This document shows, one piece after another, positions 1 to 46,786 of a DNA stretch of 64,000 bases. The DNA lies in the NCBI GenBank assembly GCA_976226885.1, contig OZ320321.1:60326001-60390000 (forward strand), written 5' to 3'. The notes beneath the pieces were generated by a model that had not been told where the DNA came from, made no database searches, and worked only from the letters and a program-made list of their open reading frames with translations. Position 1 is the first letter of the stretch. The number at the start of each line of letters is the position of its first letter. The stretch comes from Iphione sp. A-MEVVRFRX5 (Eukaryota). The translations under genes were made by a program, and so were the position numbers.

Positions 1-318
1 GGAGTACGTGTGTACTGAGCGTAGCTCGGAAGGTTCTAGAAAGGATCTCTCCAGAAGGATCCTGTAGAGAAAGGTAGTATGTGCTATAGAAGGTTCTAGA
101 AGCACCCCTCCAGAAAGATCTCTGGGGGAGGGTGTTACTATCTTTAAGACTGCACAATGGCTAATTTTAGAGCCAGACTCTGTATATAAGGGCACTGATT
201 TCTTGAATAAAGACAGTTCTCATCCGGACTTGGAAGTGAGGACACCAAACGCATATTCTGTGTGGAAGTTCTTTATTTCACAGTGGCCATCCGGCCTGAC
301 GACGACCGACACGTTACA
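1..318 (+). mobile_element. 3' part of an LTR (Gypsy-like), truncated by the window edge
   Basis: TATATAAG at ~183, AATAAA at 206-211, ends ...GTTACA (318), followed by ATAT (319-322). The paralogous site at 4228 (gt-ATAT-gg) has no insertion. Confidence 0.7.
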
Positions 319-11568: not shown

Positions 11569-11682
11569 CTAGTCACGGCCGGGCGGGTTAAAACTCTGCA
11601 TACCACCCGAGCCCGGCTCCCGCTCGCTCGCCTGCTGCAGCGGTTTCCGTGTCTTCTCTGCCTTCCGGTACATTGTGATCTC
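11569..11682 (-). CDS. VPS26: VPS26 last coding exon (exon 9)
   Basis: ctgtag|GAG ATC ACA ATG TAC CGG AAG = EITMYRKAEK...NPPGRD*, matching the VPS26 C-terminus (EIxLWRK). Phase 0, consistent with the previous exon. Confidence 0.85.
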   Translation of the reverse strand, partial: EITMYRKAEKTRKPLQQASEREPGSGGMQSFNPPGRD

Positions 11683-12255: not shown

Positions 12256-12398
12256 CTGTTGCTTGAAGTAGCGGCGCTCTTCCTCGTCGACCAGCACCAG
12301 GTTGAGGTAATAGCGCACCGAGAACTTCTTGTTGATATCCCGCATGGTGGGCGTCAACTCGTAGCCGCTCAGGAAGAGCCGGATCGGAATGGACTCCC
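12256..12398 (-). CDS. VPS26: VPS26 exon 8 (143 nt)
   Basis: (G)ESIPIRLFLSGYELTPTMRDINKKFSVRYYLNLVLVDEEERRYFKQQ; tag| and |gtgag junctions. Confidence 0.97.
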
Positions 12399-13405: not shown

Positions 13406-13474
13406 CTTTGACGGGTGCACCATCCATTATTTCGTATTTGGCGATTGTTTCGTTTTCGTTGAATGTATTCGGAC
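13406..13474 (-). CDS. VPS26: VPS26 exon 7 (69 nt)
   Basis: (G)PNTFNENETIAKYEIMDGAPVK(G); cag| and |gtaag junctions. Confidence 0.97.
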
Positions 13475-14745
13475 CTGCATGGATAACACAGCACAGTATG
13501 AGCAACATGTTCCAGTAAAATGATTGCGTTGCATCTGACTTTGATAAGCTTTCTCTGGTAACAAATATCACTGAACATGTTAACTACTGCTGATGACTAA
13601 CTTGTTCCGTAAGACTTCATGAGAACACTAGCTTATATTGGGTTAGTTTCATTACTGATTAAACCAACATTTGCGTTTTGCGCATGCAAACATTCCAGAT
13701 TTCATAAAACACCGCATTCGTTATATTATTTACTTATTTATTAATTACACGCAAATCAGAACACAAAGCACGAACAATTTGGGGGTAGATTCAAATTAAC
13801 TTTACAACATTCTATATGCATGATAAAAGGATGCACTAGGAGACTACCTTTCATATTAATGTCATGGTGGGCTTCACTAATCTCTTCTCCATCATATGAA
13901 TCACAATTACTGGATACGAAATACAAGGAGGATAAAATAATTGGAGGAAAAAAACCCCGAAGATTCAAATGAAGCTTGTGCGATTGCAAACGGTGGTCAG
14001 GTGAAGGGACATCAGAGTGCAACTGAGCAGGTGAAAACCCCAGGAGATGATAATCTTTCCCAGAATAGGTGGAAAGAAAAAAAAAACCAAGAGGAAAGTA
14101 GAATCGGGAAAAAATAATTTGAAGATTTGAAAAAAAAACTATACCAATGCCACATTTCAATAACAGTACACCAAAAAATACCCCCCCCCCCAATCACATT
14201 TTTGATTCAGTGGAAACCAGGTTTCACGTAATATGGATTTCCGTAGCGAGATAGTTGTGTGCAGGCAGGCCTCTGCTAACCAGGCCGTTCATCAAAGATT
14301 CCCTTTTAGCTAAACCTATTGACTTCTGAACCTTGTTTTCACCTAACTGATGCCAGAATCTGATGCTTGGTTGGCCCGGAAGGGTACGAGGACATACCAT
14401 AATTCAAGTTGAAGGCCTTGTTACGAAAAAAAAAGGGGGAGGGGGGAGGGGGGGGAGCAGTCGCACGAGGATCTGAGAGTTACATACAACGATATCAATA
14501 CTGGACGCTAATACAGCTTCAGTCACTAAACGGGGAATATTCCAAAACATATAGCAACCGTTTGTGGTAGGAGACGGAGGAGGAGGAAGAGGAGGCGCAG
14601 AAGGAAGGGGGGAGGGTCAAAGTTGTTCTCAATCTCACAGTGTTCGGTATTTATTTGCAACAAAACTATTTACAATGGGACTTTAAAAAGACGGGATTTT
14701 CTTTAACACGGAAAAAAATCTGTAAAAATTAAAATGTTTAAATAC

Positions 14746-14852
14746 CTGACCCTGTTGTTTCACGCTTGATAATTTGAATCTCCATATGTTTGATTTTTAT
14801 TCGCACAAGGAGAAAATAGATCTTCCCCACTATAACATCTTTCAAATGATAC
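14746..14852 (-). CDS. VPS26: VPS26 exon 6b (107 nt, putative mutually exclusive exon)
   Basis: ttttttatacag|G TAT CAT TTG... = YHLKDVIVGKIYFLLVRIKIKHMEIQIIKRETTGS(G), donor |gtattt. Open frame with correct phases. Confidence 0.93.
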
Positions 14853-15731
14853 CTGTATAAAAAAAACACGGGCAGAAAAGAGAGAAAAAGAGGCACTGGT
14901 TGAGTTCACTAGCTACGTCACGGTCTAAGTCAGCAGGCAGAACGGGAGGAGAAGTCCCATGAGGAGACTTCGCCGACCACGGAATACAGGGAAACGATCG
15001 GTCACGTCCTTAGTGGTTAGAGAGGCCAATTACGGCTCATTTCTGCTGCTTTAGGAGGGCTAACCGCCGAGTGAATCGAGCATCGCCGGGTGAATTAATA
15101 CTGTGCAAAGTCTTATACACTAGCTTGCCGCAATGTCCAAAACCACCGTGAAACATCACCGATTATTTCATTTTTTTCCAAATCATGATATTTAAAAAAA
15201 ACATATTAATAGAAAATAAGATGCATCTTGACATCCCGAAAGTAGACGCCCAGGCTGTGCATGCAATTTTTTTAAAGATCTATGTGACACGAGGCGTAGG
15301 TCAGTATGGCTAGAGGTGGTGAGCGGGAGGGGGCAGGAGAAGGAGGCGGCGGCGGCGGCGGGGGGAGGGGCAGCAGGGCCTGTGGAGTTTCAGTGAAGGC
15401 CGCCACCTCTCTCCCCGCCGTCCTCTATCCACGCACACAAGGACGGGACCCTGAAAAGGAAGCGCTTCTCTCTCTCTCTCTCTCTCTCATCTCTCACCGT
15501 GTCCAACCTGGAAACCTACCACACATCTATAATATCCCCCGTACATTTCCAACGGGCGGGAGGAAATGTACAGGAGAAGACGGGGAGGAACATATCAGAA
15601 CAACACGAACAGACCGAAAAAAAAAAAAAAATCAAAGCACAACATGGAGGACAGACGGGCAGTGAATCATAGCGGGCCTCATCGACATTGAAGAAGATGT
15701 TAATGAAGGGGTATTGTACTTGTCGTGTCAC

Positions 15732-15838
15732 CTGCTCCCGTCGACTCGCGCTTAACGATCGCCAGCTCCATGTATTTTATCTTTATTCGTACGAGGAGGA
15801 AGTAAATTTTGCCGACTATCACATCTTTCAAATGGTAT
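15732..15838 (-). CDS. VPS26: VPS26 exon 6a (107 nt, putative mutually exclusive exon)
   Basis: tttctgttgcag|A TAC CAT TTG... = YHLKDVIVGKIYFLLVRIKIKYMELAIVKRESTGA(G), donor |gtgaca. Open frame with correct phases. Confidence 0.93.
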
Positions 15839-16915
15839 CTGCAACAGAAAAGGCTCGGTGTTGACGGGGGCTTCTGCGCACACCGCAGCAGCGGCGGTGG
15901 GTCGGGCGGGATCCAGGCCCTGCTGGCTCGCCTACTACAGCAGCAGCAGCAGTGTTATGGTGTATTGTTTTCTCTCTCACACTTATGAATTAGATCATCC
16001 CGATGCCAGCGGTCGATTTCAAAGTTGTTTTTTTTTTGCTCCAGATGCGGATCAAAGTGACACACAGTCCAACACAGGTGCTTACGAGAACTCCGGGAGA
16101 GAGGCAGGCGAGAACAGGAAGAGTTTTACAGACACCAGATGGGTGGTGGTGAGGGGTTTTCCTTGGGGTGCAGTAAAAATTCAACACACTTTTCCTTTTA
16201 GAGACAAAAAAAAACTTTGGGATTACATTTACTGATATAAAAGTAATGAATTAATTCAAAAGTTATGCAAATAGTTCATACACATATGAATCAGGGCATA
16301 TATGACCAAAAATATCTATAAACAAACAGAAGGAAATAAAAAAAAACTGCTACTTCAAAATGTATGACAACCGAAGAAAAAGTTTACCAGTAACAAGTCA
16401 TGCATATAATTTTTGCCCCATAAAGATGTTTCTTTAGGACACAACCGGTAACGCTTACGTCTGTAAAGCACAGTACTAAATGAAGAAATTCTCGCCGGGT
16501 ACAATATCTGACGGTTAAAAATAAGCTACGCAAACCTAACAATGCCAGTTCTGTTCACTGATGATAATGCATTCATGCTATAGGAGCAGACGTTTGTAGC
16601 CGGCTGCACTGGGAAATGCGGTTTCCCGACCAGGGGGCAGCACCTCCTCTTATGGCCGCTACCTGACGGAGTCAAGAGGAGCATCCAAGATGGCGAGAGG
16701 GTTAAAAAAAAAAAAAAAAAAAAAAAGGCATCTACAAATGGCCGTTCATAGGCGGAACAAGACACTGGAAAGCTCGCTTGAGGCTTGAATGCACTGCCTA
16801 CTTTTTTTTTTCAACATGCACGACTGATGATTGCTGGACTAGGCAGTTCCGATGGCATTCTGACCACGGGCAAACATGCCTCCTGTAGCTACTGGCCGCA
16901 GCTGGCGGCCACCGC

Positions 16916-17198
16916 TAGCTTCTCTCTCTAGGCTAGTCAATGCCCGTGCTCTGCAGTAGCTTCACTCTAGGCTAGTCAATGCCCGTGCTCTGCCGTAGCT
17001 TCTCTCTCTAGGCTAGTCAATGCCCACACTATGCCGTAGCTTCTCTCTAGGCTAGTCAATGCCCGCGCTCTGCCATAGCTTCTCTCTCTAGGCTAGTCAA
17101 TGCCCACACTCTGCCGTAGCTTCTCTCTAGGCTAGTCAATGCCCGCGCTCTGCCGTAGCTTCTCTCTCTAGGCTAGTCAAGGCCCGCGTTCTGCCGTT
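16916..17198. repeat. Minisatellite, 38-40-nt unit, ~7 copies
   Basis: Unit TAGCTTCTCTCT(CT)AGGCTAGTCAATGCCCRYRCTCTGCCG. Confidence 0.95.
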
Positions 17199-17854
17199 CC
17201 CTGCTGTTGCGTATGTATACCGACCGTTGCCGAGCAGGCTAGAAAGGACGGGAGAGGTAGGGAGGAGGCGCACCTGGGCGAGAGGCCCCACACGTTGCAC
17301 AGGCGGCTCCCCCGTTTCGGCAAGCTTCCATTAAATAACAGGGAAACAAGAGACGGATTCCTGAAGGCCAACCGGTTGCCAGGGTGAACTGGGAGGAGGT
17401 GGAGAGAGGGCGACCAGGACACATCGTCGGCTTTTACAATCACAAGTGAACAACTTTTCATGTTCGTCCAATTCAAAAACAGCTTCCCGTTAGGACCACC
17501 TCCAACCGCATGAACTTTGCCCTTTTTGTCTCTCATCACATTCATTTAGTACTGTGCCAAAATAATACTGAAATAGCTATCACTCTTGCAGTGAATAGCA
17601 CTTGCTATAGTTTTTTTTTGGGGGGGCGGGGTAATGATATAAATGTATCCTGTAATTATAACAGAATATGTTATTAGTGAATGGAATAATATGTAAAGAC
17701 ATCGGCATCTCGTTGACATGATGCCTCCAAAGAAAGAAAATCAAAGTGGAACAACATGGAGGGCATCCCTCATCGAATACATCATCAATACAGATGTCTG
17801 AAGTGAAGAATACTGACAATGTACTTCATATACATGAACTCTGTCGTCACGTGG

Positions 17855-18460
17855 TACGTTCTATGAGATTCCCTTTTACCATATAGAGGTTAATGTACAT
17901 AGTTCTTGCAAATAATTCTACATGTACATGTTAAACAAGCAACCTAGGAGACGAGGTTGATAAAATGCATCCAAACAGTAGAAATGCAGTTACTGATATC
18001 AATAAATCATGACGTTGAAAGACAAGCAGTGAATAGTCAGGAATGGCAATACTGTTTTGTCACATAGTAAGTTCTGTGGGATTCCCTTTACTATATGGAG
18101 ATTAATGTATGTAGTTCTTGTATATAGTAGTACATGTACATGTAAAATGACGAACCTAGGAGACTAGGTTGATAAATGCTTCAAAACGGTAGAAATGTAG
18201 TTACTGACATCAATAAATTATGACGTTGAAAGACAAGCAGCGTATACATAGTCCGGAATAGCAATACTGTTTAATCATGTAGTAAGTTCTATGAGACTGC
18301 TTTTACCATTATAGAGATAATGAACGTATTTCTTGTATATAATGTTATATGTACATGTCAAATGGACCAACCTAGTGTCTGATACATTAAAACAGTAAAA
18401 ATACAGTTACTGATGATATTGATACGATAAGTAGTGTACAGTCGGGAACAGCAATGCCAA
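17855..18460. repeat. Diverged tandem repeat, ~213-nt unit, ~3 copies
   Basis: GTTCT(A/G)TG(A/G)GA...AACCTAG... recurs at 17858, 18071 and 18285; ATGACGTTGAAAGACAAGCAG is shared by the first two units. Confidence 0.9.
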
Positions 18461-18525: not shown

Positions 18526-18690
18526 TTGGATTTGTTGTATTCAAACTCTATGTGCAAGCAATCCTCTATGCCCACCTCCATCTTTATGGAATTGTTCATG
18601 TCGGGGTATTGCGACAACGTGTGGACGATGATGTCCTGCTCCTTGACGACGTCACTTAGCCGCTTCACGATCGTCACGCGCAGGAAGTAT
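18526..18690 (-). CDS. VPS26: VPS26 exon 5 (165 nt)
   Basis: YFLRVTIVKRLSDVVKEQDIIVHTLSQYPDMNNSIKMEVGIEDCLHIEFEYNKS(K); cag| and |gtaag junctions. Confidence 0.97.
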
Positions 18691-20115: not shown

Positions 20116-20272
20116 CTTAGTCGGACGTTAGCACCCGTATACGACTCGTAAGGCTTCTCAACTTGGTTGAACTCGAACTCATAGCTGGTGTTTTGCGTCA
20201 GTTCGCCGGGCCGGGCCAGCTCCTTGACGAGCGATGTGAATTCGTGGTGGTTACCACGGTCGTAGTACAATT
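20116..20272 (-). CDS. VPS26: VPS26 exon 4 (157 nt)
   Basis: (E)LYYDRGNHHEFTSLVKELARPGELTQNTSYEFEFNQVEKPYESYTGANVRL(R); cag| and |gtgag junctions. Confidence 0.97.
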
Positions 20273-22231: not shown

Positions 22232-22307
22232 CTATTTGTCCTATGAATTCTATTTTAATTCCTTGGTGCTCTAACTTTGTGCCGGCTTTCCGTAATGTGA
22301 TATTTAC
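22232..22307 (-). CDS. VPS26: VPS26 exon 3 (76 nt)
   Basis: VNITLRKAGTKLEHQGIKIEFIGQI; cag| and |gtaag junctions. Confidence 0.97.
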
Positions 22308-22862: not shown

Positions 22863-23006
22863 TTTGCCTGAGACGGTCTCGCCGTCGTAGTAGAGGTAAT
22901 GGCGCTCCTTCTTGCCGTCCTCCGCCTTGATCTCGGCCGTCTTCCGCGTGTCCTGGCCATCGAGCACAATGTCCACGTCGGCGCTCTGGCCGAACCCAAA
23001 GAAACT
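22863..23006 (-). CDS. VPS26: VPS26 exon 2 (144 nt)
   Basis: ttggcag|SFFGFGQSADVDIVLDGQDTRKTAEIKAEDGKKERHYLYYDGETVSGK|gtaggt, a VPS26B-like N-terminus lacking only the Met. Confidence 0.96.
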
Positions 23007-46783: not shown

Positions 46784-46786
46784 CAT
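46784..46786 (-). CDS. VPS26: Probable VPS26 exon 1 coding part (ATG only)
   Basis: The minus strand reads cagcgaaATG|gtaggt: purine at -3 and a strong donor. It supplies the phase-0 Met missing from exon 2. As recalled, vertebrate VPS26A also has an intron right after the ATG. Not confirmed by transcript data. Confidence 0.6.

What the first reader, a model, noticed from the sequence alone, without database searches (positions are those of the whole stretch)
14746..15838. VPS26 has a tandemly duplicated exon 6 that looks like a mutually exclusive exon pair
Seen in sequence: two 107-nt exons (6a 15732-15838, 6b 14746-14852), each with intact AG/GT sites, the same phases and open frames. They encode an identical 21-aa N-part (YHLKDVIVGKIYFLLVRIKIK) despite many synonymous differences, which implies purifying selection on both. 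The C-parts differ: YMELAIVKRESTGAG vs HMEIQIIKRETTGSG. Because 107 is not a multiple of 3, including both or neither shifts the frame, so only one-at-a-time use gives VPS26. The 879-nt spacer is too long for steric exclusion. Recalled knowledge: the segment matches residues ~185-220 of human VPS26A in the C-terminal arrestin lobe, where vertebrate VPS26A and VPS26B also differ; 6b resembles VPS26B. Inference: one gene makes two retromer variants by splicing, analogous to the vertebrate A/B paralogues. I know of no description of this.
Basis: partly seen in the sequence, partly recalled or inferred. Interest (0 to 1): 0.87.

Follow-up and report, generated by a model that had tools for sequence, protein, structure and literature searches.

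The report
Ancient alternative exon pair in VPS26
This invertebrate's single VPS26 (retromer) gene has two interchangeable copies of one exon; the pair also occurs in molluscs, brachiopods, ribbon worms and annelids, and oysters use one copy per mRNA, so it is a genuine but ordinary kind of alternative splicing that the papers searched do not describe for this gene.

Summary
A minus-strand VPS26 gene has two 107-nt exons, 6a (15732-15838) and 6b (14746-14852). Both have AG/GT sites, the same phase and open frames. They are 72% identical in DNA, and the first 21 codons show 12 synonymous and no amino-acid changes.

The pair is not private to this genome. The same 6a-then-6b layout, with a 580-879 nt spacer, occurs in Owenia (annelid), Lineus (nemertean), Lingula (brachiopod), Crassostrea and four environmental contigs. 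Priapulus and a starfish have one ancestral exon. Capitella, Paralvinella and Octopus keep only 6b.

The 6a copies group together on a tree (93/92 support). Synonymous sites are saturated while amino-acid change is low, so both copies are under purifying selection.

RefSeq lists equal-length isoform pairs that differ only in this exon for more than ten mollusc species and Lineus. Intronless oyster contigs encode the 6a-only protein; it was seen on 12 contigs against 114 for 6b.

Including both exons gives a stop at codon 4 of 6b in all five genomes checked. Skipping both shifts the frame.

The exon pair is real and ancient, and is a new member of a known kind. No RNA data exist for this genome, and the functional difference between the isoforms is unknown. 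The earlier notes searched hold nothing on VPS26.

The parts
22863..23006 (-). VPS26 coding exon 2 (SFFGFGQSADV...ETVSGK). The ATG lies on an upstream exon that was not located with certainty.
   Evidence: AG/GT flanks and frame. Pfam Vps26 positions 1-44, E 5.7e-10.
22232..22307 (-). VPS26 exon 3 (76 nt)
   Evidence: AG/GT flanks. tblastn to VPS26 proteins.
20116..20272 (-). VPS26 exon 4 (157 nt)
   Evidence: Pfam Vps26 positions 70-120, E 1.4e-19.
18526..18690 (-). VPS26 exon 5 (165 nt). It ends with AA; the codon is completed to Lys by the first base of 6a (A) or 6b (G).
   Evidence: Pfam Vps26 positions 122-175, E 4.5e-24.
15732..15838 (-). Exon 6a, the divergent copy (...KYMELAIVKRESTGAG). 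It is probably the minor or regulated form.
   Evidence: Orthologous 6a exons in Owenia, Lineus, Lingula and Crassostrea. The 6a copies lie on one side of a tree branch, support 93/92.
14853..15731 (-). The 879-nt intron between the two copies
   Evidence: The equivalent intron is 580-879 nt in nine genomes or contigs.
14746..14852 (-). Exon 6b, the canonical copy (...KHMEIQIIKRETTGSG)
   Evidence: 33 of 35 residues identical to the VPS26B chain 2r51_A.
13406..13474 (-). VPS26 exon 7 (69 nt; GPNTFNENETIAKYEIMDGAPVK)
12256..12398 (-). VPS26 exon 8 (143 nt)
   Evidence: Pfam Vps26 positions 236-275, E 1.1e-17.
11569..11682 (-). VPS26 last coding exon, up to and including the TAG stop

Best explanation
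Exons 6a and 6b are an ancient tandem duplicate of one VPS26 exon, and one copy is used per mRNA. The gene therefore encodes two 325-aa VPS26 proteins. They differ at six residues of this exon (human VPS26A positions 206, 209, 210, 212, 216 and 219): Y/H, L/I, A/Q, V/I, S/T and A/S. Four of these (206, 210, 212, 219) separate nearly all 6a-type from 6b-type sequences across phyla. The duplication arose in a common ancestor of annelids, molluscs, brachiopods and nemerteans, and 6a was later lost in some lineages. Exclusivity is enforced at least by the reading frame. Because 107 is not a multiple of 3, joining 6a to 6b creates a TGA at codon 4 of 6b, far upstream of the last junction, so the mRNA should be a target of nonsense-mediated decay (inferred). 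Skipping both exons shifts the frame. Exon 6b is probably the default and 6a the minor, regulated choice (inferred). This rests on weaker pyrimidine tracts before 6a in several species and on roughly tenfold fewer oyster contigs for the 6a isoform. What the isoforms do differently is not shown. As an inference, the changed residues lie on the strand just before the loop that human VPS26A uses to bind VPS35, so they may tune a partner or cargo interface of retromer.
For: Anatomy in the window. The same ordered pair, with both exons 107 nt and AG/GT intact, occurs in Owenia, Lineus, Lingula and Crassostrea and in four environmental contigs. A single exon is found in Priapulus and Patiria, with the ancestral KHMELAIIKRETTGSG, and a 6b-type single exon in Capitella, Paralvinella and Octopus. 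On the tree the 6a copies lie on one side of a branch (93/92), and the lophotrochozoan 6b exons plus the single exons group together (94/91). By the Nei-Gojobori method, pS is 0.6-1.1, while pN is 0.05-0.10 for 6a and 0.01-0.05 for 6b. Equal-length X1/X2 RefSeq isoforms differing only in exon 6 exist for Lineus, Crassostrea (3 species), Haliotis (3 species), Biomphalaria, Pecten, Mizuhopecten, Mytilus trossulus, Ruditapes and Mya. Intronless contigs from four sequencing runs encode the oyster 6a-only protein, whereas the genomic gene spans about 6 kb. That protein is on 12 contigs against 114 for 6b. A JGI contig encodes a 6a-type protein without interruption. The stop at codon 4 of 6b on read-through is present in all five genomes checked.
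Against: No transcript data could be obtained for this genome, and its own VPS26 protein was not found in the protein collection. The only annelid annotation with the pair in its genome (Owenia) lists only the 6b form, so use of 6a in annelids is inferred from conservation. No element that controls the choice was found. The functional consequence is untested, and the predicted structure was unusable in the C-terminal lobe (pLDDT below 50).
Confidence: 0.88

Rival explanations
1. Exon 6a is a silent relic in this particular genome. It is conserved in sequence until now but no longer spliced in, on its way to the loss already seen in Capitella, Paralvinella and Octopus.
For: Exon 6a has been lost repeatedly. 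The Owenia annotation uses only 6b. No RNA evidence exists for this genome.
Against: The window's 6a has an open frame, AG and GT sites and a pyrimidine-rich acceptor. It differs from Lineus 6a by only 4 non-synonymous against 17 synonymous changes, which is not the pattern of a decaying exon.
Confidence: 0.06
2. The main role of 6a is regulatory rather than coding. Including it together with 6b makes an unproductive mRNA carrying a stop, which lowers VPS26 output.
For: Inclusion of both exons gives an early TGA in all five genomes checked.
Against: That TGA follows automatically from the conserved YHLKD coding sequence. The peptide encoded by 6a is conserved across phyla. Full-length 6a-only mRNAs and RefSeq isoforms exist.
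Confidence: 0.04
3. The two copies are an assembly artefact: haplotypes or a collapsed duplicate placed in tandem.
For: None found.
Against: The copies are 28% divergent in DNA and have unrelated flanks. The same arrangement occurs in nine other independent assemblies or contigs.
Confidence: 0.01

Closest known systems
Mutually exclusive exons derived from tandem exon duplication (for example, the human tandem duplicated exon substitution events reviewed in PMC9741552 and PMC8373072)
   Same: Adjacent homologous exons of equal length and phase, ancient, both under purifying selection, giving isoforms identical except for one homologous segment.
   Different: The gene (VPS26) is not among the cases found in the papers searched. 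The pair is restricted to lophotrochozoans. Nothing is known about how the choice is regulated.
Vertebrate VPS26A / VPS26B paralogues
   Same: Two VPS26 variants exist in one organism. The vertebrate paralogues also differ in the second half of this exon and not in its first 20 residues.
   Different: The vertebrate forms are separate genes. The 6a/6b split is an independent event: outgroups have one exon, and both copies are closer to VPS26B. The known A/B functional difference maps to the C-terminal tail (PMC8635440), which the two isoforms here share.
Mutually exclusive exons controlled by competing RNA structures (docking and selector sites; Dscam, 14-3-3, ATE1; PMC6071210, PMC7797038)
   Same: A two-exon cluster from a tandem duplication.
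   Different: No complementary intronic elements shared between species were found. The window has only a 12-bp perfect pairing flanking 6a, in GC-rich repeat-like sequence that pairs about as well elsewhere.
Oyster alternative oxidase duplicated-exon isoforms (PMC5589949)
   Same: A duplicated exon is spliced alternatively in a bivalve housekeeping-type gene.
   Different: Different gene. The VPS26 pair was traced here across four phyla.

Membership tests
VPS26 (Pfam PF03643), retromer subunit | Sequence match to the Vps26 profile along the whole domain | tested here: met
   Six exons match profile positions 1-44, 70-120, 122-175, 177-211 (both 6a and 6b) and 236-275, each above the 27-bit cutoff. 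The exons are colinear with VPS26 proteins by tblastn, mostly 75-94% identical for the closest proteins.
Mutually exclusive exon pair from tandem exon duplication | Neighbouring exons are homologous, with the same length and phase | tested here: met
   Each exon is 107 nt with the same phase. They share 77 of 107 bases and 29 of 35 residues.
Mutually exclusive exon pair from tandem exon duplication | Each copy has its own usable splice sites and an open frame | tested here: met
   AG|...|GT at both copies in the window and in eight other genomes or contigs.
Mutually exclusive exon pair from tandem exon duplication | Mature mRNAs carry exactly one of the two | tested here: inconclusive
   Met in relatives: equal-length RefSeq isoform pairs and intronless oyster contigs with 6a only. 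It could not be tested for this genome because no transcripts were available.
Mutually exclusive exon pair from tandem exon duplication | Inclusion of both or of neither is unproductive | tested here: met
   Both included gives TGA at codon 4 of 6b. Neither included gives a frameshift with a stop in the last exon.
Mutually exclusive exon pair from tandem exon duplication | Both copies are kept by selection | tested here: met
   pS is 0.6-1.1 against pN 0.01-0.10 among orthologous copies. The 6a copies lie on one side of a tree branch, support 93/92.
Mutual exclusion by steric hindrance | The intervening intron is too short to be spliced out | tested here: not met
   The spacer is 879 nt in the window and 580-838 nt in relatives.
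Mutual exclusion by U2/U12 splice-site incompatibility | One U12-type donor or branch site within the cluster | tested here: not met
   The donors are gtaagt (e5), gtgaca (6a) and gtattt (6b). None fits the U12 consensus (consensus from general knowledge).
Mutual exclusion by competing RNA structures | A docking site complementary to a selector next to each copy, conserved between species | tested here: inconclusive
   Exact-complement scan in five genomes: nothing shared. One 12-bp pairing flanks the window's 6a, and it is not unique. Gapped or GU-rich pairings were not searched.
Orthology of 6a/6b with vertebrate VPS26A/VPS26B | Each copy groups with one vertebrate paralogue | tested here: not met
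   Both copies score best against VPS26B. Priapulus and Patiria have a single exon.

The most novel reading that the evidence does not exclude
Lophotrochozoans make two functionally distinct retromer complexes from one VPS26 gene by swapping this exon. That would be an independent, splice-based counterpart of the vertebrate VPS26A/VPS26B split. The 6a isoform would change a partner or cargo interface near the VPS35-binding loop and would be used in particular tissues or conditions.
Probability: 0.35. Interest if true: 0.6.

Novelty: new member of a known kind. Interest (0 to 1): 0.45.

Why it matters
Retromer is a central endosomal sorting machine, and how its variants are specialised is studied almost only through the vertebrate VPS26A/B paralogues. 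Here, natural selection has kept two versions that differ at about six positions of one short segment, in four phyla and probably for more than 500 million years. That marks a small, well-defined part of VPS26 as functionally tunable and gives two natural variants to compare in binding assays. It also adds a clear, datable case, with several secondary losses, to the record of ancient duplicated-exon splicing outside vertebrates and insects. It does not reveal a new mechanism.

Tried and rejected
1. I tried to find this genome's own VPS26 proteins, or any transcripts, in the protein collection. A search with the closest relative (Tegillarca, about 91% identical) listed no window-encoded protein. 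The spliced protein has no reference form, so it could not be looked up.

2. A search restricted to the exon-6 region, meant to list all 6a-type proteins, did not separate the types, because scores differ by only a few bits. Isoforms are also hidden inside 90% clusters. Listing cluster members solved this.

3. I suspected a second, arthropod-like pair (RYMEV against KHMEV). The proteins are only 79-89% identical overall, so they come from different species and are not isoforms.

4. Intronic pairing scans gave little. The first scan timed out. The window has one 12-bp perfect complement flanking 6a, about -43 kcal/mol against -29 +/- 4 for shuffles, but that arm pairs as well or better with other sites. 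Nothing comparable was found in four other genomes.

5. An AlphaFold2 model of the oyster 6a isoform from a 37-sequence alignment had pLDDT below 50 over residues 152-337. No structural statement is drawn from it.

6. The papers that give VPS26 residue-level contacts (Shi 2006, Lucas 2016) are not held. The position of the variable residues relative to VPS35, SNX3 and cargo sites therefore remains an inference.

Full report
**Observation.** The minus strand of 14600-16000 shows two exons of 107 nt, 6a (15838..15732) and 6b (14852..14746). Each is preceded by AG and followed by GT, and each starts one base before a codon boundary. A codon-by-codon comparison gives 77 of 107 identical bases. Codons 1-21 encode the same peptide despite 12 synonymous differences. 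Codons 22-35 carry 6 amino-acid and 5 synonymous differences. The repeat finder sees similarity only over the exons plus about 13 nt of flank (D4), so the flanks are unrelated and the spacer is 879 nt.

**The gene.** Stop-to-stop translation of the minus strand and inspection of the junctions give a complete VPS26 gene:
- exons at 22863-23006, 22232-22307, 20116-20272 and 18526-18690;
- then 6a or 6b;
- then 13406-13474, 12256-12398 and 11569-11682, all with AG/GT.

With an upstream ATG the gene encodes 325 aa whichever copy is used. The exons match Pfam Vps26 in order, and 6a and 6b match the same profile positions 177-211. Against solved structures, 6b is 33/35 identical to VPS26B chain 2r51_A and 6a is 29/34. 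Both align to residues 185-218 of VPS26A chains. The exon carrying the ATG was not located with certainty. In Owenia, Lineus, Lingula, Crassostrea and Patiria the ATG is the last three bases of exon 1. The window has a similar site (gaaATG|gtaggt) at 46784-46786, which I list only as a candidate.

**The pair in other genomes.** A profile-free search with exon 5 gave full-length VPS26 proteins, and two word-based searches gave about 300 more. Their exon-6 segments fall into three groups:
- an ancestral type, KHME(L/I)AIIKRETTG(S/T)G, in cnidarians, echinoderms, hemichordates, Priapulus and arthropods;
- a 6b type with Gln at position 210, in lophotrochozoans;
- a 6a type, (K/R)YMELAIV(K/R)RE.TGAG, in molluscs and a nemertean.

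Three ab initio mollusc models (Tegillarca, Mya, Nucella) read through both copies in the order 6a then 6b.

I then fetched genomic loci and searched them with both window peptides.
- Owenia fusiformis, Lineus longissimus, Lingula anatina and Crassostrea each have both copies. The order is 6a then 6b, each copy is 107 nt with AG/GT, and they lie 798, 752, 580 and 687 nt apart.
- Priapulus and the starfish Patiria have one exon of the ancestral type.
- Capitella, Paralvinella and Octopus have one exon of the 6b type. The Octopus and Priapulus loci contain N runs, which I left alone.
- A degenerate DNA pattern for the 6a peptide found four more environmental contigs with the same pair, 613-838 nt apart.

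**Age and selection.** A maximum-likelihood tree of the fifteen 107-nt exons puts the five 6a copies on one side of a branch (93/92). It groups the lophotrochozoan 6b exons with the single exons of Capitella, Paralvinella and Octopus (94/91), apart from Priapulus and Patiria. The duplication therefore predates the split of annelids, molluscs, brachiopods and nemerteans, and 6a was lost several times.

Nei-Gojobori counts show synonymous sites at or near saturation (pS 0.6-1.1). Non-synonymous change is small: pN 0.05-0.10 among 6a copies and 0.01-0.05 among 6b copies. Both are under purifying selection, and 6a evolves several times faster.

Relative to the outgroup state (H206, L/I209, A210, I212, S/T219 in VPS26A numbering), each copy has its own derived residues. 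Exon 6a gained Y206, V212 and A219. Exon 6b gained Q210.

**Use in mRNA.** Members of the 90% clusters, classified by their exon-6 peptide, show RefSeq isoform pairs from one gene that have equal length and differ only in this exon. The species are:
- Lineus longissimus (X1/X2; 6 differences in 332 aa);
- Crassostrea virginica, and C. gigas/angulata (8 differences in 337 aa);
- Haliotis rubra, H. cracherodii and H. rufescens;
- Biomphalaria glabrata, Pecten maximus, Mizuhopecten yessoensis, Mytilus trossulus, Ruditapes philippinarum and Mya arenaria.

Babylonia areolata has two VPS26 genes, and both keep the two forms.

The oyster 6a isoform is encoded without interruption on contigs of 1.4-2.9 kb assembled from four sequencing runs, whereas the genomic gene spans about 6 kb. 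These contigs must derive from spliced RNA. That isoform was seen on 12 contigs and the 6b isoform on 114. For Ruditapes the counts are 1 and 19. A JGI contig likewise encodes a 6a-type protein, and a 6b-type sister sequence sits in the same cluster. So 6a is expressed, alone, and as the minor form.

**How exclusivity works.** Joining 6a to 6b gives TGA at the fourth codon of 6b in the window and in Owenia, Lineus, Lingula and Crassostrea. This is a by-product of the conserved YHLKD coding sequence read one base out of frame. The stop lies far upstream of the last exon junction, so nonsense-mediated decay is expected (inference from the usual 50-nt rule). Skipping both exons shifts the frame and replaces the C-terminal lobe with about 100 unrelated residues.

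The other known ways of enforcing exclusivity find no support:
- The spacer is too long for steric exclusion.
- The donors do not fit the U12 consensus.
- Exact-complement scans found no intronic pairing shared between species.
- The window has a 12-bp perfect pairing flanking 6a (within 15914-15950 and 15346-15382), but the GC-rich arm pairs as well or better with other sites.

The acceptors before 6a have poorer pyrimidine tracts than those before 6b in Lineus, Lingula and Crassostrea. This fits a regulated minor exon.

**What the isoforms may do.** This is not shown. In my reading of the arrestin fold, recalled and not tested here, the exon encodes two beta strands of the C-terminal lobe. 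The first half is invariant and includes residues L197 and R199, which were mutated in the VPS26B entries 3LH8 and 3LHA. The second half carries all the differences. It is followed in the next exon by the EIMDGAPV segment, which I recall as the VPS35-binding loop of human VPS26A. The cargo pocket lies between strands beta10 and beta18, with V168 and F287 (PMC13174498). The AlphaFold2 model was unreliable in this lobe. The idea that 6a retunes a VPS35, sorting-nexin or cargo interface is therefore a hypothesis only.

VPS26A and VPS26B do differ at 7 positions in the second half of this exon. However, the exon is more conserved between them (81%) than the proteins as a whole (about 70%). Their known functional difference lies in the C-terminal tails (PMC8635440).

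**Novelty.** Full-text searches found no paper holding both VPS26 and 'mutually exclusive exons', none of the retromer papers that mention a mutually exclusive exon concerns VPS26 by title or abstract, and no listed paper combined VPS26 with the duplicated-exon terms. The isoforms do exist in automated RefSeq annotation. Tandem-duplicated, mutually exclusive exons are a well-known device, and earlier notes of this scan report many other such pairs in this same genome. Those notes call the genome an annelid, which I did not test. The earlier notes searched hold nothing on VPS26. I rate this a new member of a known kind, well supported by comparative evidence and of moderate interest.

Noticed in passing
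The same divergent gene pair is found in Owenia, Lineus and Lingula, there only about 0.6-2 kb apart. This is conserved microsynteny, possibly a shared promoter region.
   Followed up: partly
window 46784-46786 (- strand), tentative; L002:3001, L003:3001, L004:2001, L008:2001, L014:1501: In five other animals the VPS26 start codon is the last three bases of exon 1 (ATG|gta). The window has a look-alike site (gaaATG|gtaggt) at 46784-46786, which would imply a first intron of about 24 kb containing the two N runs. It was not verified.
   Followed up: partly
window 14853-15731 and the equivalent introns in L002, L003, L004, L008, L016, L017, L018, L020: The intron between the two copies stays within 580-879 nt in nine genomes or contigs. 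The intron before 6a ranges from about 325 to 2690 nt, and the one after 6b from about 378 to 1271 nt. A length or content constraint on the spacer is possible but untested.
   Followed up: partly
window 15914-15950 and 15346-15382: An inverted repeat with a 12-bp perfect core (CAGCAGGGCCTG) brackets exon 6a and could loop it out. It lies in GC-rich, repeat-like sequence, the arm pairs as well elsewhere, and no counterpart was found in four other genomes.
   Followed up: partly
window 16916-17197 and 17838-18414 (intron between exon 5 and 6a): There are two tandem-repeat arrays: about five copies with a 40-nt period, and about three copies with a 212-nt period. They are probably ordinary intronic satellites.
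   Followed up: no
L001 (Capitella), L007 (Paralvinella), L005 (Octopus); cephalopod proteins P0424-P0427: Exon 6a has been lost independently in at least two annelid lineages and in cephalopods, while the remaining exon keeps the 6b hallmark Gln210.
   Followed up: yes
proteins P0189, P0380, P0381 and P0198, P0418 (Babylonia areolata): This gastropod has two VPS26 genes on different chromosomes. Each is annotated with both a 6a-type and a 6b-type isoform, so the exon pair survived a whole-gene duplication.
   Followed up: partly
protein P0001 (Acipenser sinensis, flagged UNVERIFIED_CONTAM): This 453-aa VPS26 model repeats the segment encoded by exons 3-5. It is probably a gene-model or assembly artefact.
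   Followed up: no
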